This document shows, one piece after another, positions 7,828-35,117 of a DNA stretch of 43,934 bases. The position numbers and the translations under genes were made by a program. Source of the stretch: Hyphochytrium catenoides (lineage: Eukaryota > Protista > Hyphochytriomycota). Location: assembly GCA_900088475.1 (NCBI GenBank), contig FLMG01003765.1:1-43934 (forward strand), given 5' to 3'. Every line of letters starts with the position of its first letter. The first letter of the stretch is position 1. The notes beneath the pieces were generated by a model. It made no database searches and was not told where the DNA came from. It saw only the letters and a list, made by a program, of their open reading frames with translations.

Positions 7828-8779
7828 GTTCCGTGGCAGCGGAGAGTCTAGGCAGTTAAGGCATGACCCTTCTTTAAAGCAATAGACGACCGGTCAGGGT
7901 ACCACGCCCTCGAAGTAAGAGTTCTATTGAACAGAGAGAGGTTGTGCGCGGGGAGAGAGAAAGAGAGAGAGAGAGACCAAGATTAAAGCCGTCGGAGCTT
8001 TGTTGGCCTTGTCTCTTTGGCTTGACAAGTGCTAGTCGTAGCCTTCACTTCGTGCTCTCTTTCTCAAAGTCGTCCAGCTGCCGTAGGAATCACTCAATGT
8101 AAAGAGGAGAGAGATTAACGGACTGCTCACAGAGCAGGAGAGAGACCCGTCGGTAGGAGAAAAAGAAGCTATCTCTTCGGTCTCTCCTTCGCTAGTCCTC
8201 CTCCTGCTTCTCTGTTCTACGAACAGGCTCTTCTCATGTTACCGTTCTCCATCAGGGAAAGGAAAGGAACAGAGATGTAACCAAGCATCAGACGTCGAAA
8301 GGAGTTGCGCAGTGGTGACACGAGAGGGAGAGGAAAAAGAGGGGATCAAAGTGTGAGAGGAGAGAGCGTAGGGTGGTGGAGGCTTAGGAAAAGTAACCGC
8401 GAAGAAGGGGCGAGAAGAGAAAAAATGAGAGTCGAGAAAAAAGAGGAGACATAGTTTTGGAGCAAGCGAAGCCAGCGAGGGAAGAGAAGGCGAACGACTA
8501 GAGAGGGAGAGAACAAATGAAAGCGAAAAGAGAGAGAAAGGAGAGAGAGAGAGAGAAAGAGAGTCCGAGAGAGAGAAAGAGAGTCTGTGAGAGAGAGAGA
8601 AAGGGAGTCAGAGAGCGAGAGCGAGAGAGCCTTCGAGCGAGAGAGAGCGAGAGAGTGAGTGACAGAGAGAGAGAGAGAGAGAGANNNNNNNNNNNNNNNN
8701 NNNNNNNNNNNNNNNNNNNNNNNNNNNNNNNNAGAGAGAGAGGTCCAAGAAGCGAAAGGACACACTTCCCTCTCTCCAT

Positions 8780-9400: not shown

Positions 9401-11090
9401 GGCCGCCGTCCATTCGTCGTTTCTCCTATAAAGCCATTATAAATGCCAGTTGCAGCGGCCTATTGTGGTCTGTCTGCCCAGCCAGCAGACGGTAAGAACA
9501 CCTTCTCGTCTATCGGCCTGCCTACTCTAAAAATCCGCTGCTATATTTTGTCTACAAGGTTACTCTTTCTTTGTAAGGCAATAAGAAGTATTAGAAGCTT
9601 TCCTAATTCAAAAAAGCTTAAAGCAAGCTACCTGGGCCCGTTCATCGCACCCCATCTTTGCGTATTTATTGTATGGCAACGAGAGAGTCAGTAGCGGCTA
9701 GTGTAGTTGTTAGTAGTCCATAAGATGCTCCCCCTTCGAAGGATATCGAGCAAGAAAAAGTCAGACACCACCTAAGGTTCAGCTTTCTCTAGTATGCACA
9801 ATTGGTGGTCGGCAGATGATCAGCTGCACCAGCAGAGAAGAAGAGAAGATGGTGAATCTTGAAAAAGTAAGAGGTGATAATGATGATGCATGCCGAAGAA
9901 GAACAGCTCTTAGTAGTAGTATCAGGCCTTACCTGGGATGACAGCAAAGTGATAGTGGAGGACATCAACAAGGGAAGAAGATAATGAAGAAAGAAGAAGA
10001 AGACGGCGGAAGATATGTGGCGATGTGGGAAGAATGGAGAATGAAGGGGAAAAGAAGGCACAACCAATGCAAGGAGGAGGAAGAAGAAGAGCAGGGAAGA
10101 GAACCTTTGGTAGAATCAACAACAGTCAGTAATCAAATCACTATGGAGATCAAACTGCTGTCCTATCAGTTATCGAAACTTAACAGCTTTTTATTCTGAC
10201 ACTTTTCGAGCGGTTGACCCTCGATGAAGACTAATGTTCTAAGCACAATGCACCCACCTAAACGTGTGTCAGTGTGGTGAGAGAGGCACAGAGGCCCTTC
10301 AGACAGCGGCTCACAGCACTTTTTGGGTGTGAACAGTAGGATGGCAGCAGCTGCAAGACAGAGTCAGAGCATGAGAGACAGAGCAGTTGTGAGATGTGGG
10401 GGTGGCAGTGTTCAGCCCCTATAGAATGACAGACAGAGCAATGCAGTGTTTAGAGTGATAAGCTAGAAGAGGCTGGGGAAAGCCCAGAGAATGAGCGGGC
10501 AGACAGAGTGAAGCCGCTTGAGCTTTCTAGGGCTAGACATGCACATAGAGAGAGAAAGAGGAGGAGAGAGAGAGAGAGAGAGAGAGAGAGNNNNNNNNNN
10601 NNAGAGAGAGAGAGAAAGTGGCCCAGCGAACGAATCAGCTTCCTCATCCGAAGGTGCGGCAGGTTCCTTGTGCGTCTGAGCGGTAGCATCTCACTGAAGA
10701 GCGAGAGTCATCGCAGCGCCGCGGCATCTGAAGCTTTACAGACGCAAGAGCCGCGTGCAAATCTCTCTGGTTAGCGCTCGGAGGCGAGGGCGCAAGAAGT
10801 GGTAACTGTGGCGCGCGCTGCCTTCTTGGAAGGAGGAGCTAAGTAGAGCGACGAGAGAAGAAAGGTGATCACAACGAGAGAGAGACAAGGAGGGAGAGAG
10901 TGTGAGTGGGAGCATCAAGGAAGCCGGCCCATCGTTCTCCCATTAGTGAGTTCATAGGGAGAAAGATAGCGCCTGTAAGCCGGAAAGGAAAGGAGTCAGG
11001 CTATCACCGCATTCCGCTTCCTTGTGAAGAGTCTCTGTGTCCTTCTCCAGTTTTTCCTCTTGCTGCTGGGCCGCTGTGCGCTTGGAAACT

Positions 11091-13914: not shown

Positions 13915-14770
13915 CAGACACGGACGAGGGGGAAGAAACCCACAGGGAGAGAGGTAGGGCTCGGCAAGGTGGAGAAGAACAAGAGGCGGCTTTGAGATGG
14001 AAAGAAAGGGAAGGGAAGGGCGATTCTTTATAATTTGTTATTTAGAGATATTACGCTCTGTGATAGATAAGCTAAGCCGAGGCTTAGCACGAGATTATTG
14101 ACGCGATAATGAAAAGTGAGCTATGAAGGGCTCTTAATGGTGCCTCTTGGCTGCTTCTCTGTCTCTGTGTCTCTCTCTCTCTCTCTCTCTCTCTCTGTCC
14201 CGCGACCGTACAAGGTATATTTTGTCTCTCCTTGAGCTCNNNNNNNNNNNNNNNNNNNNNNNNNNNNNNNNNNNNNNNNNNNNNNNNNNNNNNNNNNNNN
14301 NNNNNNNNNNNNNNNNNNNNNNNNNNNNNNNNNNNNNNNNNNNNNNNNNNNNNNNNNNNNNNNNNNNNNNNNNNNNNNNNNNNNNNNNNNNNNNNNNNNN
14401 NNNNNNNNNNNNNNNNNNNNNNNNNNNNNNNNNNNNNNNNNNNNNNNNNNNNNNNNNNNNNNNNNNNNNNNNNNNNNNNNNNNNNNNNNNNNNNNNNNNN
14501 NNNNNNNNNNNNNNNNNNNNNNNNNNNNNNNNNNNNNNNNNNNNNNNNNTCGGGTTTACCGAAGAGTTACGAGCTTGCTGTGCTGCTCGCCTAGCAACTA
14601 TCTTGTCCGCCTCTCTCCAATGACCGGTAGCCGTAGTCACCGCCGTAGAGGAGGTCTCTTCTCTGCCTTGAGCTCACCCAGCAGCTAATGCTGTGCCTAT
14701 CTATCTCCTCCTCAAACCTACGGTCTTTCTCTCTGCCGATGTGGCCCCATTGGCTCAGGAGCTCCTAGTC

Positions 14771-23296: not shown

Positions 23297-25643
23297 CTAG
23301 CTTTCCTCTTCAAAGAGGTAGTTGTCAGCTTGGTTATTGCTTTCCTCTTTCCACCACCATCCCTGGCTCTCTCCTCTCTGTGGCTCTTCTTCTCTCTTGC
23401 TTACTGTCTTGTCGTATCTTTGGATCCTCACAACGGGCTCCACAGCGGTGGCCGCCCTCGTGCTCTCCATTGGAAGTATGGGCATTGGGGGACCTGGGGA
23501 GGAAGAGGCGTAGTAGGATGCGGCGCTAGGCTTTGTCTCTTTATCCGCTTGGAAAGATTTCTCCTTGTTCTGCAGGAGGTCCATGATGTCGTGTCGTCCT
23601 GTTCTTTCTTCCTCTAGCGTTATCTCAGCTATCTGTGGAGCACAGATAGGCGGCTGTCAGCTTGCTGTTCGTCCGACCACTTCAAGCTCCACCTAGCCTG
23701 CACTGATGGAAGAGATCCGCTTCCTGTCTCCTCGCGTTAATACTCTCGCCCGCTATCTCTCTCACCCTCTTTGTCTGTCTGTCTGTCTGTCTGTCTCTTT
23801 CTCTCTCTCTCTCTCTCTCTTCTCTTTCTCTCTCTCTCTCACAGCTAGTCCGCAACCGTTTTTCGTTTTCTTCTCTCCACACTCTCTCCCTACATCCATG
23901 GCCTCTATCAGTTTGCGCTTCGTTTGCTCGTATTCTCTCTCTGATGCTTAACTTTCCTCCTTTGGATGACAGGACCTTACCAGCTCAAGCATAACGTCAC
24001 ACTTCAAAGCCAAATCATTGTTCTGCACGTCCTTCTCTTCCAAGGCCGTCTGCAAGAGAGAAAGCTTCTGTGTGGACGAAGAAAGAGACACGGAAAGTCT
24101 TTCTCTGTCTGCCTGCAACCTTTCCACTTCTCGAACAAGGATCGCTTCTCTCCGGCTTGCCTCCTCACGAAAGCGGAGTAGGTTAGCGTCACTTTCATTA
24201 ATAACGTGCTGCTGCTCTGTCTCCTTCGCCTCCGCTTTTCTTCGAGCTTCCTCCAATGCCTGGGATAGGCTAACTATCTGCTGTGCATTGGCCTCATGCT
24301 GTCTGTTCATCTCTTGGACCCTCTATGTTGACAAAGATATAGATCTGAGTGCAAAAGAGTATGCAGACACAGAGCGGAGATCAAGGCAGACGAAAAGGAG
24401 AAGCAATCGTTCATGCAAGGAGAGTAGAAGAGGATTATGGGAGAAGAAAGACGCGGATTGGATGTGGAAGGCTCACCTCAGACAAAGAGGTCAGTCTGGC
24501 GTCCTTGTCTTGCAGTTGTTGCTGCAGTCGAGTGACCTCTGCGCTCTTAGAATCCTCGAGCTCTTGAAGCTGCCGCCTTATGCTAGTTACCGTTACCTCT
24601 CTGTCGTGTGCCTGGTGCCTTAGAGACGCCTCAGCTTTCTCTTTCTCTTCTAACTGCTGTCTTAATGTACTCAGCACCTCTTCTAAGCCCCTCTTCTGAA
24701 GCTCTAGCTGCAGCCGTTCTTCTTCTGCAATGGTCCTGTAGGAGAGCTGTTGACTCTTTAGGGAGTCTAGCAGTGCCTGATGGCTCTCGTGAGCCATCTC
24801 GCGGAGATTGGACTCTGTCTTTAGAGCTTCCTGACAGTCAGAAAGCAGCCTCTGCAATCTTTGGATCTCACCGCTGTTCTTCTCTTCTTGCTGTCGCAGG
24901 TTCTCTCTCAATGTTTCTACTTGGCCCTCTTTTTCTAGTTGTACCCTTTGCTCTGTCTCTTCTTTCTCCCGTTGTGCCACCCTTGCAGCTTCGACTTGCT
25001 TCTCATATGACTCTCTTAGCTGTAGGTACTCGCTGTCTTTTTGTTCCAGCTGTCTTTGCAAGGAGAGGGCATGCGTCTCCCTCTCTTTTATCTCTTGAGA
25101 CGATGCTTCCAGCGCATGGATGAGTCTTTCTTTCTCTCGGCCAACCTCCTCCGCGAGGGCCTCTTTTGCTTGTCTCTCCAGCTCTTTCTCTTCCATCCAC
25201 TTCTTGATCATCTCCTCCAGCTTTCCATTCTCGGCTCGCATGTGACCCAGGCGCTCTTCTGAGGCTATCGAGCGGCTTGCCAAGTCATCATTGATCTTCT
25301 GGAGGTGGCTGATCTGCTGCTGAAAGTCTTTATGTCGTGCTTCTGAGAGCTCGAAGCGGTGTTGAGAGTCATCTAAGAGCTTCCGAAGCTGTGCCAGGTC
25401 CAAATCTTTGGACTTCAGAGACTTCTCCTGCTGCCGCCGAAGGTCCTGCAGTGCATTGAGCTCGGCCCTTAGCTGTGTAATCTCCTCGAGATGTTTGCCG
25501 AGAGCCACGTCTGCTCAGTTTCCGGAGTCAATGGATGACGGAGGAGAGAGAGACGCAGACAAGACATGCACAGGAGGGAGAATAAGGGAGATATAAAAAG
25601 GCGCAGGGAGAGAGGGAAAGATAGAGAGAGAGAGAGGGAAAAG

Positions 25644-28951: not shown

Positions 28952-31900
28952 ATGGCAGCAGGGGCAGCGGGCAAGTACGTTGTGCACAAGTTTGGAGGGA
29001 CCAGTGTTGCCAGTGCAGACTGCTATCGCCAGGCCTGCACCATCATTGAAGATGTCCAGCGCAACCATGATGGGCCCGTAGCAGTGGTATGGCCGTCCGT
29101 CTCCCCATCTCCACTCTCAACACACCCCATCCTCATCTCTCTTTCTCTTGCTCTCTCTCTCGCTCTTTCGCTCTTTCTTCTCACTCTCTCTATCCCGGCC
29201 CTTCCCTTCTCTCTTCTTTTTCTGCGTTGTCCCCATCGACTCTTCATGTCGTAGGTCGTGTCTGCGATGGGAGGCAAACCAAAGGTCACTGACCTGCTGA
29301 TCCAGTTGATGACGCTGGCAAGGACGGGGAACCTGGGTGACTGTGAGGCTGTGCTAGACGGGTTGCGACAGAAGGTGCTAATTTATGGCAGGCCGCATTG
29401 CAACGCCATCTCTTGATATGCTGTGTCTCACCCTACGCTGTTCCGCTCCGTTAACCTTTATTGCAGTTCACTTTCCTTTGCCGTCCGTTCTCTCCTATGG
29501 CCCTTTCTCTACTCATCATATTCTCTTGCTTCAGCATTTCACCGCTATCAAGGACATGCTTCCAGAGGCACGATGGGAGAAGCTGCAGGCGATAATCGAG
29601 CAGGATCTGACGAACATCAAAGACATTCTTAAGGCTGTAGCACTCATTAAGGTATATGACTAGATTTGAAATGGCGTTATTGCCACTTTNNNNNNNNNNN
29701 NNNNNNNNNNNNNNNNNNNNNNNNNNNNNNNNNNNNNNNNNNNNNNNNNNNAATGTGAGGATAGAGGAGCTCATCTCTGGCCATGGCGAGCTCTGGTCAG
29801 CGAGACAGCTGCAGGAGCTTCTCTGCGCCAGAGGACATGACTACGCTTACCTTGATGCTAGGAAGGTGTGCTAATAATGATGATGTTACCCTGTCCCTCC
29901 TTCGGCCTTTCTTTCTGCATCCTCCTCTTCGCCCCTACACCTTCCCTCTCCCTCGCTATTCCAACTTTCCTAAGTCTGTGGCCCCAGGTCCTCGTAGTGG
30001 AAGAAGGAGAGAAAGGGCCACAAGTCCTCTGGGAAGAGTCAGAACGTCGCCTGCAAGAGTTCCTCTCCTCTCTTCAGCCAACCAAGAACCTTGTCATCAC
30101 CGGATTTGTGGCTTCCACACTCTCAGGAGTCAGCACTACGCTGAAGAGAGACGGAAGTGACTTCTCAGCCTCCATCTTCGGCCGGCTTCTTGGAAGTGCC
30201 TCAATCACCATCTGGACAGATGTTAGCGGTGTGCTTAGTGCGGACCCAAGACGAGTGCCGGAGGCTAAGATTCTTCCTGAGATTTCCTACAAAGAGGTAA
30301 GAGCAGCAGACAACGGAAAGCAGGCAATGCCCCTCTGACCACTCTTCCCCATTCCATCCCCGCGTACCTCTTCGTCTCCCGCTCTTATATACCTGTGTGG
30401 CCCTCTTCCTCCTCTTCTCTCTCCGTACGCCCTTCCTACTTTTAGGCAATGGAGCTGGCGTACTTTGGCGCTAAGGTGATACACCCGAAGACCATGGCGC
30501 CCGCAGTCGAAAAGTCGATCCCTATCTATATCAGAAACACCTTTATGCCACATCATAAGGGCACTAGGATTTTTACGTCTATCTGGGAGAGAGAGAGCAG
30601 GAAAGAGAGGCCGGAGGAGAGAGAAGACAACGTCTGCGGCTTCTCCACCGTAGACGACTTGGCGCTATTTAACCTTGAAGGTCATGGCATGGTGCGTGAG
30701 GAGAAAGAGACAGAGAAACAAATGATTGGCCTAACCTCATCCTCTTCTCCTTCGTGTTTGTCTGTCATTTACTCACTTTTCGCATGCCCTATCGCCTTAC
30801 TAGAATACTCGACTACTGCTTCCGGCGCCTCTTTGTTTCGTCCGGCTTGCTTTTGCCTATAAGTCGGCCCTTCGCTTCTGCCTCATCCGGCAATTGCTCT
30901 TTCCCATCAGCCAACTGTGGGTCTCGTCTAGTTTGGCCTCACTGGAGGGCTCTCTCTCTTCTTAGGTCGGTGTTCCAGGTATCGCAAGCAGACTATTCGG
31001 TGCGTTAGAGAAGGTGAAGGTCAGTGTGGTCATGATTGCGCAAGCCAGCTCGGAGCATTCCATCTGCTTTGCTGTGCCCAACAGACAGGTAAGCGGACAG
31101 ACCTCTTTCAGGAGCCCGGCATAAAGCTCTCCTCAGTGCACGAGTGAGTGTAAGAGTAAAGAGTGGTGTTCTAGTTTCACTTTCTCTCTCGTGTCTTTAA
31201 ATCTGTGCTCTCTGTGGCAACTAGCTATCCTAAAGAAACGCGGTAGCCGAGGAGGTAGAAAGGAAGCCATGAGCAATCGGCCAAGAGAACAGCAATAGAG
31301 CTCACCTTCATGTTTGTTCTTCTGCGAACCATTGCAGAGTGAGATCACTTGTGACGCGGTCACTACAGCTTTCTTCAAGGAGATTCATGACGGGGACATC
31401 AATGTATGCCTTAGAGCTCCAAAGCGCTCCCCCTCTCGCTACATCAGTAGTTCCCTTGATTGGCTTCATCACCCGTACATTTTCTTACCATCATACTTTC
31501 TGGTGTCAACAAGGCTTCTTTCCTGCGTAGCACGGCAGTTGTCCCCTTCCTCTCCTCACAATGCTTTGCGATTTGTCTGTGTGCTCCTTGTTCAGTTCGC
31601 CTCCATCAACTTGTTGCTTCCATAAGATAACCCTATTAAAGCCTCTAGATCATATCTCTCCGGTCAGCGTCATTGCTGCTGTGGGCGACGCGATGCCTCA
31701 CGTGCCTGGAGTATGCGGGCGATTCTTTCAAGCGCTGCGGCACGCTGGGATCAATGTCTTGGCCGTGGCCCAAGGATCCAATGAAAGAAACCTGTCTTGC
31801 GTAAGTTCTCGTATCTCTCAGTGTCAGTGTGTTTGTCCGCGCTCTTGCTCTTGTGGAGTATCATGGCAAGGTCTAACCAGTAACCTAACTTGTGATGTTG

Positions 31901-34900
31901 GCTCTCACACAGGTCGTTCGTCACGCAGACTCCGCCCGCGCCCTTCGTGCCGTGCACTCAGCCTTCTTCCTGTCTTCTCTCACATTGTCGATCGGCCTGG
32001 TAGGGGTACAAGGTGAAGGCAGCATTGGGTTGGAGCTATTGGAGCAGATTAACAGGCAGAAAGAATGGCTGAGAAGTAGATACCATGTAGACCTTAGGGT
32101 AGGTTAACGCACCGACCTACTTTTCTTGTCAGTGCCTCTTCGTCAACCTGTTCCTCCAGGCCTACTTTCCTTACTCGTACTGCCTCCTACTCGCTGTCTC
32201 CTTAAGGTCGAAACCTGACGTGCTCACGCTTTCACTCTTCTAGCTCACCGACCCTTTGTCCCTTGAGATTTCAACTCGTTGAAGTCGTTCTCATTGTAAC
32301 TATATTATCAAGCGAGGCCCCAGCCATTGAGACCGGATCTGTCTCTGCTGTTTCTGTTTACTGCAATTCTCTCTTCCACTGGCTAATCTTTCTTTCCTCG
32401 TCCCTGCGCATCGCATCCTCAGATCCGAGCGGTGGCGTCAAACTCCCATATGCTCCTGCACGAGACGGGCCTAGACCTTGAACAGTGCATTCAAACCTTC
32501 TCAGCTTTGGCATCTTCAGACCCCTCGGCGGCGGCTTCCTCAATCTCTCTACCTCTGGTGCCTCTAGACAGGGACCATCTCCTGGAGCATGTGAAGGCAG
32601 ACCACATACCTCACTGGGCCGTGGTGGATTGCTCAAACAGGTGTGCACCTCCAAGTGTTAGCGTGCCAACGGGTCTCTATCTCTCCTCCGTCCTCTCTCA
32701 TTGATCAAGCACCCTTATGACTTCAAGCTCAGGACCATGCCATTGAGCTTTCGCTTGCCCTGCTCGTTGCATCCAGTTTCTCCCATTATCCTCTTGTCGC
32801 CTTAACCTTTGACCTTATTGCGTCCCCAACTGAGGGAGCCAGCCATCCTGACGGCATCTGACCGTCGCTTTTCCTTTCACTCTTCGTCTACTTACCTTCG
32901 CGTAGCGAGTCATTGGCCAGACAGTACCCCTCCTGGGTGTCGCAACGGCTTCACGTCGTAACAGTGAATGTTGAGAGCCAGGCGGGCCCTCAGAGTCTCT
33001 ATGACCGTATTTTGGAGATGAAATGCAGAGAGAGCACTGCTGTACAAGCGGAGGGCGTCGTGGCCCCAGGTCTGCCAGTGCTGGGAACCTTAGAGGATCT
33101 CATACAAGTAGGCAGCCTCTTTCCATTTCGTCCCTGATGGCCCTGGCCCGCTGAGAGGTCATTCAGTTATTTGCTATGAGGTCTATGCGTCCCTTTGGGG
33201 CTGTTCTTCCGATTTCGACTTGAAGGCGTTACGATGGGCCCTCTCGCTGTCCTGCCGCTGCTTCTCTCATCTCATCATCAAGCGCTCCCTTGCGACTCTT
33301 TTTCATTGCTCAAAGTCTCTTTTAGATCAAGATCTCTAGTGGGTCTCGCGCTCGCCGTGGCTCAACATTCTCTTCTGCCGAACCCTTCAACTCATTGCTT
33401 TTGTAGACGGGTGATGCGGTGCGAGCAGTGCTCTGTGTGCTCTCAGGAGGTATCAGCTGGATCCTCAGTGCGATGGAGGATGAAGCAGATAGGGCGACAG
33501 AGACAGGAAGAAATGGAAAGGAAGGAGGGCTGGTTGGAGCAGCTAAGAAGGCGCTAAAGCTGGGATTCTGCGGTCCTCCTGCTCTCTCACACTTCGCGGA
33601 GGACTTTACCGGTATCACTGAGGCGAAGAGGGTAAGAGCCAGGCTTCTCCAGTCCTCGGTCCCTTCGCTGAGTACTCGGTTTGGCTAACTTTTCTCCTGC
33701 CTCCGTCCTTATTTATTGCCATGGTTTGCTTGATTGTTTGTCTATGTTATCCCCGTAGGCGGTGATCCTAGCTCGAGAATTGGGTCTGGAGGTGGAGCTC
33801 AGTGATGTGAAGGTTAGCCAAGGATCTCACACGATTAAGAGGCACTCTCTTCTGCTCTCAGCCGCGATTTTTTATCACTCTTACCGACCTGCATTTTGTC
33901 TGCTCTCTCTCTGTTTCTCTCCTGTGCTTGTCATTGGTCTCTCACTCTCGGTGTGTCTGCCTCTCTATGTCTTCTTCTTCTCTCTATTTGTCCCTCTTTG
34001 CCTTAGTCTGACATCTAGCCTACTTCTATCTTCATAACCAACTCATCGCTTACCTCTTCCAATGTGCTATTCTCCATACAGATTGAGGGGATTCTTCCCA
34101 TCTCTATGGCCAAGGCTTCACAGTCCGAGATTCTCGCGGCACTGGCAGAGCGGAGCGATGAGCTTCAAGGAAGACTGCAAAAGCTCAAGCTGCAAGGCAA
34201 AAGACTGCAGTACGTGCAAAGCAGAGAGGAAGAGAGAGAAAAGCTGTCAAATGCCTTGGGAGGGAGATGACGGTGAAGCGCCGAGGAGGGAATCTGACAT
34301 CATAAGGAAATGCACTAATTGGCTAATCTACCACTGTGCAGGCTCCTGTCACGCGTAAGCCTCGATGGGCAAAAAGCTGCCGTAAGCGTGGCGTTGGAAG
34401 TGACAGACAGGGAACATTTCTTCTCCCACGTCCGCGGTCAGTAGCCCTCTACCTCCCTCCGCATTCTTCGTTTACCCCTGACCTGCTGCTCTATCAATAC
34501 CTTTCTGCGAGAGCCACCCTGGAACTGTTATCTTGGTCACTCCTCTTCCCTCCCTTCTTCCTGGTGCCTGCATGAATTATTTGGGCTCTGTCCTTACCAT
34601 CTCTTATCCGCATATTCAGGGAATGCCAATGCTGTGGCGTTCTTCACTCAACGGCACGCCTCTCAGCCCCTTCTAGTTCAAGGCGCTGGGCCCTCTCCGG
34701 TCATCCTGGCGGGTTGTCTCTTCTCCGAGATCCTTAGACTATGCCGGGAGCTCGGCGCCAGGGATCATGGTAGGTCTCCCAGAGTGCATAACAGAGCCTT
34801 GTGGTTTGGATCTCTCCTGTCCGATGCCTTGCATGTCCAGCCACTTTCTCTGTTCGTTCGCTTCTCCTCTTGCCGCATAACTCTCCATCCTATCCAAGCG

Positions 34901-35117
34901 CTCAAACCTTCCGCAAGAAGAGAAGTTGCCAGAGCTTGTCAGTTAGGAGGTTGCATGGAGATGCTAATGCCTCTGTTCTGTCTTCTACTCTGTGTCTTCG
35001 CCCTCTCTAGGTGGCACCATTGCCATGAAGAATAAGAAGTTTAAGCCCCGGCCCTCTCCTTCCATGACCAACTTAAGTGACCTGGTAGGCGAGACCAACG
35101 GTACTTTGAGCCACTAG
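28952..35117 (+). CDS. Aspartokinase + 2xACT + homoserine dehydrogenase-like fusion (AK-HSDH, ThrA-type architecture); many exons, one partly in an N-gap; HSDH motifs degenerate
   Basis: The AK domain shows [52 protein letters not shown] and [16 protein letters not shown]. The ACT domains show [24 protein letters not shown] and [18 protein letters not shown]. An HSDH-like C-terminal half follows, with the stop TAG at 35115-35117. Confidence 0.9.

What the first reader, a model, noticed from the sequence alone, without database searches (positions are those of the whole stretch)
31912..35117. Aspartokinase fused to an apparently dead homoserine dehydrogenase (pseudoenzyme domain)
Seen: the AK and ACT motifs are intact, but each HSDH signature is altered while the frame stays open across many introns. 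HVVTPNKK becomes [18 protein letters not shown] becomes [17 protein letters not shown] becomes SGGISWI. GYTEPDPRDDLSGxDVARK becomes [23 protein letters not shown]. GPGAGAxVTA becomes [10 protein letters not shown]. The Rossmann loop reads GVQGEGSIG. Established: the NK Lys and the Glu/Asp/Lys of the EPDP..D..D..RK segment are the substrate-binding and catalytic residues of HSDH. Inference: this is a monofunctional AK that keeps a full-length inactive HSDH fold as a regulatory, nucleotide-sensing or oligomerisation module, which would change flux control at the Lys versus Thr/Met branch.
Basis: partly seen in the sequence, partly recalled or inferred. Interest (0 to 1): 0.72.

Follow-up and report, generated by a model that had tools for sequence, protein, structure and literature searches.

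The report
Aspartokinase with a dead homoserine-dehydrogenase domain
This 18-exon gene of an oomycete-related protist encodes an intact aspartate kinase fused to a complete homoserine-dehydrogenase fold that has lost its key catalytic residues; the same loss is seen across a whole clade of oomycete, algal and haptophyte genes that databases still label "bifunctional".

Summary
All six altered motifs are in the sequence. They lie inside exons of an 18-exon GT-AG gene (28952-35117, + strand), so mis-splicing cannot explain them.

- **What the gene encodes.** Exons 1-9 encode an intact aspartokinase with two ACT domains. Exons 10-17 are colinear with the whole homoserine dehydrogenase (HSDH) domain.
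- **What is lost.** Both lysines that contact the reacting hydroxyl are gone (NK to NV, ARK to AKR). The DxxxK aspartate, the EPDP glutamate and the nicotinamide-binding threonine are also gone.
- **What is kept.** The window keeps 92% of canonical-invariant positions in the kinase half but 51% in the HSDH half.
- **A clade-wide trait.** In the sampled members of the eukaryote clade (oomycetes, a dictyochophyte, a pelagophyte, a haptophyte and unnamed protist sequences), every one lacks most catalytic residues, in varying patterns. The window falls in that clade.
- **Still under selection.** In four oomycete orthologues the dead half has dN/dS of 0.06-0.08, like the kinase half. A predicted structure of one orthologue matches yeast HSDH.

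The best reading is a monofunctional aspartokinase with a pseudo-HSDH scaffold or regulatory domain. Its role is untested. No RNA evidence was available, and I could not search the rest of the genome for a separate HSDH.

The parts
28952..29086 (+). Exon 1: start codon and AK N-terminus (KFGGTS nucleotide-binding motif)
   Evidence: ORF and translation; Pfam AA_kinase E=1e-4; donor GTATGG
29255..29374 (+). Exon 2: AK ([13 protein letters not shown])
   Evidence: Translation and splice sites; 44 bits to the eukaryote-clade profile
29535..29651 (+). Exon 3: AK helical insert
29690..29751 (.). Assembly gap (N run) that hides the 5' end of exon 4
29752..29865 (+). Exon 4, 5' end cut by the gap: AK (GHGELWSA)
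   Evidence: The frame is open right up to the N run
29988..30296 (+). Exon 5: AK core ([24 protein letters not shown])
   Evidence: Pfam AA_kinase 58 bits. Query of the big search. The single-exon tree puts it inside the eukaryote clade, SH-aLRT 98
30446..30691 (+). Exon 6: AK C-terminal part ([13 protein letters not shown]) plus a charged insert
30966..31088 (+). Exon 7: ACT domain 1
   Evidence: Pfam ACT_9 52.8 bits
31338..31403 (+). Exon 8: end of ACT1
31627..31800 (+). Exon 9: ACT domain 2
   Evidence: Pfam ACT_9 50.9 bits
31913..32098 (+). Exon 10: end of ACT2, then first strand and glycine loop of the HSDH-like Rossmann domain ([12 protein letters not shown]; 3-residue insert, GxGxxG kept as GEGSIG)
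   Evidence: profile E=3e-13
32423..32640 (+). Exon 11: Rossmann domain with a Ser/Ala-rich insert; ends in [12 protein letters not shown]
   Evidence: profile E=4e-15; ends in phase 2
32906..33107 (+). Exon 12: HVVTVNVE (the TPNKK proline and catalytic lysine are lost, the asparagine is kept) and [10 protein letters not shown]
   Evidence: profile E=1e-18
33407..33631 (+). Exon 13: TGD, SGGIS (SGT threonine lost), low-complexity insert, and the degenerate catalytic loop [23 protein letters not shown] (Glu lost, substrate Asp kept, Asp to Thr, Lys to Arg)
   Evidence: This is the weakest profile score for its length (12 bits). No PDB sequence hit
33759..33812 (+). Exon 14: AVILARELG helix, conserved
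34082..34209 (+). Exon 15: variable helical region, ends GKRLQ
34342..34436 (+). Exon 16: beta-sheet of the substrate domain (LLSRVSLDG...)
34620..34769 (+). Exon 17: GNANAVAF...[12 protein letters not shown] (nicotinamide-binding GxGAGxxxT motif altered, Thr to Leu) and the clade-typical ELGARDH tail
   Evidence: profile E=6e-17
35011..35117 (+). Exon 18: basic, Pro-rich C-terminal tail and TAG stop
   Evidence: There is no homologue alignment, so this exon is the least certain

Best explanation
The gene encodes a monofunctional, ACT-regulated aspartate kinase. Its C-terminal half is a pseudoenzyme: a complete homoserine-dehydrogenase fold (Rossmann domain plus substrate domain) that can no longer reduce aspartate semialdehyde. 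The side chains that hold and polarise the reacting C4 oxygen (the NK lysine and the DxxxK aspartate and lysine) are replaced, and so are the EPDP glutamate and the nicotinamide-binding threonine. The loss most likely happened once, in the ancestor of a eukaryote clade (oomycetes and relatives, ochrophyte algae, a haptophyte). The domain has been kept since then under purifying selection. The likely role (inferred, not shown) is the structural one the HSDH half already has in ThrA-type enzymes: dimer or tetramer formation, and coupling of the ACT effector sites to the kinase. In this organism it might also bind a dinucleotide or an amino acid, since GxGxxG, the ribose-contacting Asn and the carboxylate-binding Asp survive. 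HSDH activity would then have to come from a separate gene.
For: **Shown**
- The gene model is colinear with full-length homologues. The motif changes lie inside exons.
- Against positions conserved in at least 12 of 13 canonical bacterial AK-HSDHs, the window keeps 104/113 in AK+ACT but 40/79 in HSDH. K587 becomes V, D687 becomes T, K691 becomes R, E676 is lost, T647 becomes G and T813 becomes L (P0049 numbering). N586, D682, TGD and ARELG are kept.
- In P. horikoshii HSDH the homoserine C4-OH contacts Lys116 and Lys215, the carboxylate contacts Asp206, and the nicotinamide contacts Gly296 and Thr300 (PMC4495429; PMC5893615).
- The 17 eukaryote sequences in the tree, all with degenerate motifs, form one side of an SH-aLRT 100 branch. 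Names: Phytophthora, Pythium, Aphanomyces, Albugo, Saprolegnia, Rhizochromulina, Aureoumbra, Diacronema.
- The window's exon 5 falls inside that clade (SH-aLRT 98). Its AK exons fit the clade profile far better than the bacterial one (605 vs 461 bits).
- The residue at the lost lysine varies across the clade (V, I, L, A, F, S, N). No clade-specific polar residue replaces the old site.
- dN/dS in four intronless Peronosporales orthologues is 0.06-0.08 for the HSDH-like half and 0.03-0.12 for AK.
- An AlphaFold model of the Pythium insidiosum C-terminal half has pLDDT 93 and pTM 0.92. Its top 35 PDB matches are all HSDHs, best 1EBF with TM 0.78/0.83.
- In deep comparisons the HSDH-like half has drifted: mean pairwise identity is 0.26 vs 0.50 for AK in the clade, against 0.46 vs 0.45 in canonical bacteria.

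**Context**
- The diatom T. pseudonana is reported to have a 936-aa 'aspartate kinase' plus three separate HSDH genes (PMC4523565).
Against: - No enzyme assay exists for any clade member.
- Strong purifying selection, the invariant Asn and the near-invariant substrate Asp would also fit a domain that still binds a ligand or catalyses something else.
- Oomycetes keep the second lysine, and the window has a Lys one residue before the Arg.
- I could not search this genome or oomycete genomes for a separate HSDH. A divergent but active HSDH is therefore not formally excluded.
- No RNA evidence for the splice model was available.
- The window's own spliced protein was not folded or placed in a full-length tree, because the joined step was left out. 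The fold and dN/dS evidence come from orthologues about 45-55% identical.
Confidence: 0.72

Rival explanations
1. The C-terminal half is a divergent but still active homoserine dehydrogenase that uses substitute residues, so the protein is truly bifunctional, as databases annotate it.
For: Sources name orthologues 'bifunctional aspartokinase/homoserine dehydrogenase' or 'Homoserine dehydrogenase'. Papers list them as AK-HSDH (PMC2705460; PMC5592239). Pfam Homoserine_dh still matches the orthologues above its cut-off (46-57 bits vs 22.9). dN/dS is low. The Asn of NK, the substrate Asp and, in the window, GxGxxG are kept.
Against: Both lysines that contact the reacting oxygen are absent in the window. 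The first is absent in 13 of 14 clade representatives, and the replacing residues differ between lineages, so no common substitute site exists. The Rossmann glycine loop is destroyed or split by an acidic insert in oomycetes and several algae. Pfam NAD_binding_3 falls below its cut-off in the oomycetes (21-23 vs 24 bits, against 74 in a canonical bacterium). The HSDH-like half has diverged about twice as far as AK within the clade. The annotations are automatic, not experimental.
Confidence: 0.1
2. The HSDH-fold domain has taken on a new ligand-dependent function, as an allosteric sensor (NAD(P)H, homoserine, ASA or another amino acid) or as a different enzyme, rather than being a passive scaffold.
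For: Purifying selection is as strong as on AK within oomycetes. Inside the old pocket the carboxylate-binding Asp is kept in 12 of 14 representatives plus the window, and the ribose-contacting Asn is kept in all. Within oomycetes the former active-site loop is highly conserved as DDV.GVRSAKK. The window keeps GEGSIG.
Against: No residue set specific to the clade is conserved across all lineages. The dinucleotide loop is not conserved across the clade. Nothing here tests binding.
Confidence: 0.15
3. Artefact: a wrong splice model, or a decaying pseudogene copy whose real catalytic motifs are lost through assembly or annotation error.
For: There is no transcript evidence. The assembly is a draft with N runs, one of them inside this gene.
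Against: The altered motifs lie in the interior of exons 12, 13 and 17. All readable splice sites are canonical, and the frame is open through about 440 codons and 8 introns of this half. Intronless oomycete orthologues show the same kind of loss. The N run lies in the kinase half.
Confidence: 0.03

Closest known systems
Bifunctional aspartokinase/homoserine dehydrogenase I (E. coli ThrA type; canonical bacterial AK-HSDH such as the Polyangiales, Luteimonas and Bdellovibrionales proteins P0239, P0081 and P0122)
   Same: Same domain order and length: AA_kinase, two ACT domains, Rossmann domain, HSDH substrate domain. The two are colinear over the whole protein. AK+ACT invariant positions are 92% kept. 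The TGD, ARELG, LRYV and PLVxG blocks are kept.
   Different: The window has lost the TPNK Pro and Lys, the EPDP Glu, the DxxxK Asp and Lys, the SGT Thr and the GAGxxxT Thr. Only 51% of HSDH invariant positions are kept. It has a 3-residue insert in the glycine loop and a C-terminal GARDH extension and tail.
Oomycete 'ACT domain-containing protein / bifunctional aspartokinase-homoserine dehydrogenase' (e.g. Pythium insidiosum P0175, Peronospora belbahrii P0024, Aphanomyces astaci P0005)
   Same: These are the closest full-length relatives by summed tblastn score: AK about 54% identical, HSDH-like HSPs 40-47% identical. They lie in the same clade. They share the loss of the NK lysine, the PHW motif, an insert in the glycine loop and the GAR tail.
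   Different: The oomycete genes are intronless, while the window gene has 17 introns. Oomycetes have a longer acidic loop insert that abolishes GxGxxG. They keep the second Lys but have Arg at the Asp position (GVRSAKK). The window keeps three canonical residues that none of the 14 clade representatives keep (the G of SGG, the N of GNANA, a G of GAG).
Monofunctional aspartate kinases (LysC/AKIII type, yeast Hom3)
   Same: The predicted net catalytic function is aspartate phosphorylation under ACT-domain control.
   Different: Those enzymes end after the ACT domains. This one carries an extra HSDH-fold half of about 440 residues.
Pseudo-dehydrogenase regulators with a Rossmann fold, e.g. Gal80 (analogy from general knowledge; Gal80 appears only as a distant fold neighbour at rank 42, TM about 0.39)
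   Same: The concept is the same: an oxidoreductase fold kept without catalysis and used for protein-protein contacts or dinucleotide sensing.
   Different: It is a different family (GFO/IDH/MocA) and not fused to an enzyme of the same pathway. No binding data exist here.

Membership tests
Bifunctional AK-HSDH (EC 2.7.2.4 + EC 1.1.1.3) | Amino-acid-kinase domain with intact conserved positions | tested here: met
   Pfam AA_kinase 58 bits for exon 5 alone. 104 of 113 canonical-invariant AK+ACT positions are kept.
Bifunctional AK-HSDH (EC 2.7.2.4 + EC 1.1.1.3) | Two ACT regulatory domains | tested here: met
   ACT_9 at 52.8 bits (exon 7) and 50.9 bits (exon 9).
Bifunctional AK-HSDH (EC 2.7.2.4 + EC 1.1.1.3) | C-terminal domain homologous to HSDH and colinear with it | tested here: met
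   Exons 10-17 match profile positions 1-379 in order. An orthologue model matches 1EBF with TM 0.78/0.83.
Bifunctional AK-HSDH (EC 2.7.2.4 + EC 1.1.1.3) | The two lysines that contact the substrate C4 oxygen (NK and ARK) | tested here: not met
   NK is NV and ARK is AKR, with no indel between the preceding Gly and ILARE. Their role is described in PMC4495429.
Bifunctional AK-HSDH (EC 2.7.2.4 + EC 1.1.1.3) | Asp of DxxxK and Glu of EPDP | tested here: not met
   The Asp is Thr. The Glu column is Gly or falls in an insert. That these residues are catalytic in yeast HSDH rests on my own knowledge of that literature; I did not read it here.
Bifunctional AK-HSDH (EC 2.7.2.4 + EC 1.1.1.3) | Carboxylate-binding Asp (RDDLSG) and Asn of NK | tested here: met
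   EDFTG keeps the Asp and TVNV keeps the Asn.
Bifunctional AK-HSDH (EC 2.7.2.4 + EC 1.1.1.3) | NAD(P)-binding GxGxxG loop and the GxGAGxxxT nicotinamide motif | tested here: inconclusive
   GEGSIG fits GxGxxG but sits after a 3-residue insert. In [11 protein letters not shown] one Gly is kept and the Thr is lost. Binding was not tested.
Pfam Homoserine_dh (PF00742) / NAD_binding_3 (PF03447) | Score above the gathering cut-off | tested here: inconclusive
   Only single exons could be scanned. Exon 12 gives NAD_binding_3 at 16 bits (cut-off 24) and the other exons give nothing. Oomycete orthologues pass PF00742 (46-57 bits vs 22.9) but not PF03447 (21-23 bits vs 24). P0009, another clade member, passes both (70.6 and 44.9 bits).
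Eukaryote (stramenopile/haptophyte) AK with degenerate HSDH-like half | Phylogenetic position of the kinase part | tested here: met
   The exon 5 tree gives 15 eukaryote rows including the window on one side, SH-aLRT 98. AK exons score 605 bits to the clade profile and 461 to the bacterial one. A full-length tree that includes the window was not made.
Eukaryote (stramenopile/haptophyte) AK with degenerate HSDH-like half | Shared derived characters: loss of the TPNK Pro and Lys, SN/SD in VDCSNS, the GAR[DS] C-terminal extension, and an insert in the glycine loop with PHW (oomycete subclade) | tested here: met
   Alignments.

The most novel reading that the evidence does not exclude
The conserved pseudo-HSDH half is a metabolite or redox sensor that sets aspartate-kinase activity. 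The former active-site pocket keeps the carboxylate-binding Asp and the ribose-contacting Asn, and in this organism the GxGxxG loop as well. It would bind homoserine, aspartate semialdehyde or NAD(P)H. This would give stramenopiles and haptophytes feedback at the entry of the aspartate pathway that is not described for ThrA-type or plant enzymes.
Probability: 0.15. Interest if true: 0.75.

Novelty: new variant of a known kind. Interest (0 to 1): 0.55.

Why it matters
Genome annotations and at least two comparative papers treat these proteins as bifunctional AK-HSDH. If the HSDH half is dead, metabolic reconstructions of oomycete pathogens, diatom relatives and haptophytes assign EC 1.1.1.3 to the wrong gene. 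The threonine/methionine branch would then depend on a separate enzyme. That changes which gene is the branch-point control and which is a sensible inhibitor target. It would also be a clean, old example of a pathway enzyme domain turned into a non-catalytic module while still fused to its former partner. It offers natural variation for study: the glycine loop is intact here and destroyed in oomycetes. I found no paper describing this in the searched library, but that library is incomplete.

Tried and rejected
- **Coccidian origin.** I first suspected a coccidian because of the CT-rich introns, and read that HSDH is the 'missing' threonine-pathway enzyme in Toxoplasma (PMC7909243). I rejected that link. 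The nearest relatives are oomycetes, and other agents' notes call the genome oomycete-related.
- **RNA evidence.** The look-up of sequencing runs listed no run.
- **Single-exon searches.**
  - Pfam scans gave almost nothing for the HSDH-like exons.
  - A PDB sequence search gave nothing for exon 13.
  - For exon 12 the PDB search gave one weak hit, an HSDH.
  - Only family profiles built here gave significant, colinear matches.
- **Synteny.** tblastx of the Peronospora flanks against the window gave no hits.
- **The window's own annotated protein.** A search with P0175 listed none among the best 120.
- **Joined protein.** The window was compared exon by exon instead.
- **Separate HSDH.** I did not use the last word search to look for monofunctional HSDHs of oomycetes. 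The listed top hits would have been bacterial, and the tool cannot filter by taxon.
- **New active site.** I considered a new catalytic site and found no clade-wide conserved polar replacements.
Full report
**Gene model**

The finding lies in the 3' half of one intron-rich gene on the + strand, 28952-35117. Reading the sequence and translating candidate exons gives 18 exons. The 16 intron boundaries that can be read are GT...AG, and the reading frame closes exactly on TAG at 35115-35117. The acceptor of exon 4 lies in the N run. Exons 1-6 encode an amino-acid kinase. Pfam AA_kinase scores 58 bits for exon 5 alone, and the KFGGTS start is in exon 1. Exons 7-10 encode two ACT domains (ACT_9 at 51-53 bits). 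An assembly gap (N run 29690-29751) removes the 5' end of exon 4. It does not touch the part under study.

**The observation**

- GVQGEGSIG in exon 10
- HVVTVNVE and [10 protein letters not shown] in exon 12
- SGGISWI and [23 protein letters not shown] in exon 13
- [10 protein letters not shown] in exon 17

They lie in the interior of exons, so alternative splicing cannot bring the canonical motifs back.

Single exons are too diverged for Pfam or for most PDB sequence searches. The exception is exon 12. Its only PDB hit is a homoserine dehydrogenase, aligned TPNKK to TVNVE and EATVGAGLP to [10 protein letters not shown]. I built a profile from 40 HSDH and HSDH-like domains. Exons 10 to 17 match it in order along positions 1-379, with per-exon E-values from 1e-18 to 3e-3. 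The kinase exons do not match. Added as separate fragments to an alignment of full-length homologues, exons 9-17 are colinear with the whole HSDH half.

**Which residues are lost**

I compared the window with the columns conserved in at least 12 of 13 canonical bacterial AK-HSDHs. It keeps 104 of 113 in the AK+ACT half and 40 of 79 in the HSDH half. In P0049 numbering:

| Lost | Kept |
|---|---|
| P585 and K587 of TPNK | N586 |
| T647 of SGT | D682 |
| E676 and the EPDP segment | TGD |
| D687 and K691 of DVARK (now TEAKR, with no indel relative to ILARE) | ARELG |
| T813 of GAGxxxT | the LRYV block (its Leu) and PLV |

[quoted passage not shown] The carboxylate contacts Asp206. The nicotinamide contacts Gly296 and Thr300, and Asn115 contacts the ribose through a water (PMC4495429; also PMC5893615). 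By motif position these correspond to the NK lysine, the ARK lysine, the second Asp of RDDLSG, the GAG...T motif and the Asn of NK. Both lysines at the reacting oxygen are therefore absent here (Val and Arg). The carboxylate-binding Asp and the Asn survive. The glycine loop reads GEGSIG, which still fits GxGxxG, after a three-residue insert.

**Relatives**

A search of the 1.84-billion-protein library with exon 5 gave 8066 hits. The full-length ones fall into two groups.
- One group is bacterial AK-HSDH with every motif intact (names).
- The other is eukaryotic. Every sampled member has lost most of these motifs, in patterns that differ between lineages.
  - Oomycetes: Phytophthora, Peronospora, Pythium, Albugo, Saprolegnia, Aphanomyces and others.
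  - Named algae: the dictyochophyte Rhizochromulina, the pelagophyte Aureoumbra and the haptophyte Diacronema.
  - Unnamed protist or transcriptome sequences.

In a maximum-likelihood tree of 34 full-length proteins, the 17 eukaryote sequences form one side of a branch with SH-aLRT 100. A few bacterial lineages have lost motifs independently.

The window belongs to the eukaryote clade:
- Exon 5 alone places it there (15 eukaryote rows, SH-aLRT 98).
- The AK+ACT exons fit the clade profile much better than the bacterial one (605 vs 461 bits).
- It shares the clade's loss of the TPNK Pro and Lys, the GAR[DS] C-terminal extension and, with the oomycete subclade, PHW and an insert in the glycine loop.

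By summed tblastn score its closest full-length relatives are Pythium and Phytophthora proteins. Some canonical bacterial proteins score nearly as high, mainly because the window's HSDH-like half matches them as well as or better than it matches the oomycete one. Other agents' notes call this genome oomycete-related. My results agree, but I did not identify the species.

**Is the dead half decaying?**

No.
- The four Peronosporales orthologues I fetched are intronless. Pairwise dN/dS for the HSDH-like half is 0.06-0.08, against 0.03-0.12 for AK and 0.02-0.06 for ACT. dS is often near or above 1, so the values are rough, but the direction is clear.
- An AlphaFold model of the Pythium insidiosum C-terminal half, using the 40-sequence alignment, has mean pLDDT 93.3 and pTM 0.92. 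Its best 35 PDB matches are all homoserine dehydrogenases, led by yeast 1EBF with TM 0.78/0.83.
- The constraint is nevertheless weaker than in true enzymes. Among diverse clade members mean pairwise identity is 0.50 in AK+ACT but 0.26 in the HSDH-like half. Canonical bacteria show 0.45 and 0.46.
- The residue replacing the first catalytic lysine differs between lineages (V, I, L, A, F, S, N). No clade-wide polar replacement appears anywhere in the domain.
- The glycine loop is intact in some members (the window, P0009, P0011, P0074). It is lost in others and split by a 6-15 residue acidic insert in Peronosporales and Pythiales.

**Interpretation**

- **Best reading (about 0.7).** An ACT-regulated, monofunctional aspartokinase keeps a catalytically dead HSDH fold. 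The fold is most likely kept for the quaternary-structure and allosteric role that it has in ThrA-type enzymes. HSDHs share a conserved dimer interface contributed by both domains (PMC9728202). The scaffold role is an inference. A ligand-sensing role in the remnant pocket is possible (about 0.15). It cannot be a family-wide dinucleotide sensor.
- **Active but divergent HSDH (about 0.1).** This is unlikely. Excluding it needs an assay and a genome-wide search for another HSDH.
- **Context.** One diatom is reported to have a 936-aa 'aspartate kinase' and three separate HSDH genes (PMC4523565). I did not verify that the long diatom protein belongs to this clade.

**What is known**

Source annotations call orthologues 'bifunctional aspartokinase/homoserine dehydrogenase', 'Homoserine dehydrogenase' or just 'ACT domain-containing protein'. 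Two papers list the oomycete genes as AK-HSDH. Full-text searches found no paper that describes the HSDH half as inactive, but the library is incomplete. I therefore class this as a new variant of a known kind: a known fusion in which one enzyme half has become a pseudoenzyme, across a wide clade.

**Limits**

- No RNA run was listed, so the splice model rests on homology and splice signals.
- Exon 18, the tail, has no homologue support.
- The window's own protein was therefore not searched, folded or placed in a full-length tree. Fold and selection evidence come from orthologues.

Noticed in passing
window 8685-8732, 10591-10602, 14240-14549, 29690-29751: The window contains four runs of N (assembly gaps). 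The last one lies inside the aspartokinase gene and hides the start of exon 4.
   Followed up: partly
P0029/P0197 (Myxococcales MAG), P0078/P0068, and the P0147 cluster of 24 members: Some bacterial AK-HSDH proteins have also lost part of the HSDH motifs (TPNSRA with GYTQPNVTEDLSG; QNRVA; SNNRA with LSEPLS). In the tree these fall outside the eukaryote clade, so they look like independent losses.
   Followed up: partly
L001 4807-5706 and 8836-9564; L002-L004 flanks: In Peronospora and Phytophthora the intronless orthologue is flanked on both sides by Orai-1 (PF07856) genes. Several long gene models (P0157, P0159, P0161, P0177) carry an Orai-1 hit, probably run-on models. The window shows no such synteny (tblastx, no hits).
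   Followed up: partly
window 33470-33535 (exon 13) and 32500-32560 (exon 11): The HSDH-like half carries low-complexity inserts that canonical enzymes lack ([18 protein letters not shown]; [15 protein letters not shown]). Other clade members have inserts of different sequence at the first site.
   Followed up: no
window 24435-25508, minus strand: A long open frame (357 aa) encodes a Glu/Leu/Gln-rich, coiled-coil-like protein upstream of the aspartokinase gene.
   Followed up: no
PMC7909243 (literature, not this genome): In Toxoplasma and other cyst-forming coccidia, HSDH is reported as the one missing enzyme of the threonine pathway, while an 'aspartate kinase' is annotated. It would be worth checking whether that kinase also carries a degenerate HSDH-like half. 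No coccidian protein was among the 20 top hits whose source names I looked up; the other hits were not checked.
   Followed up: no
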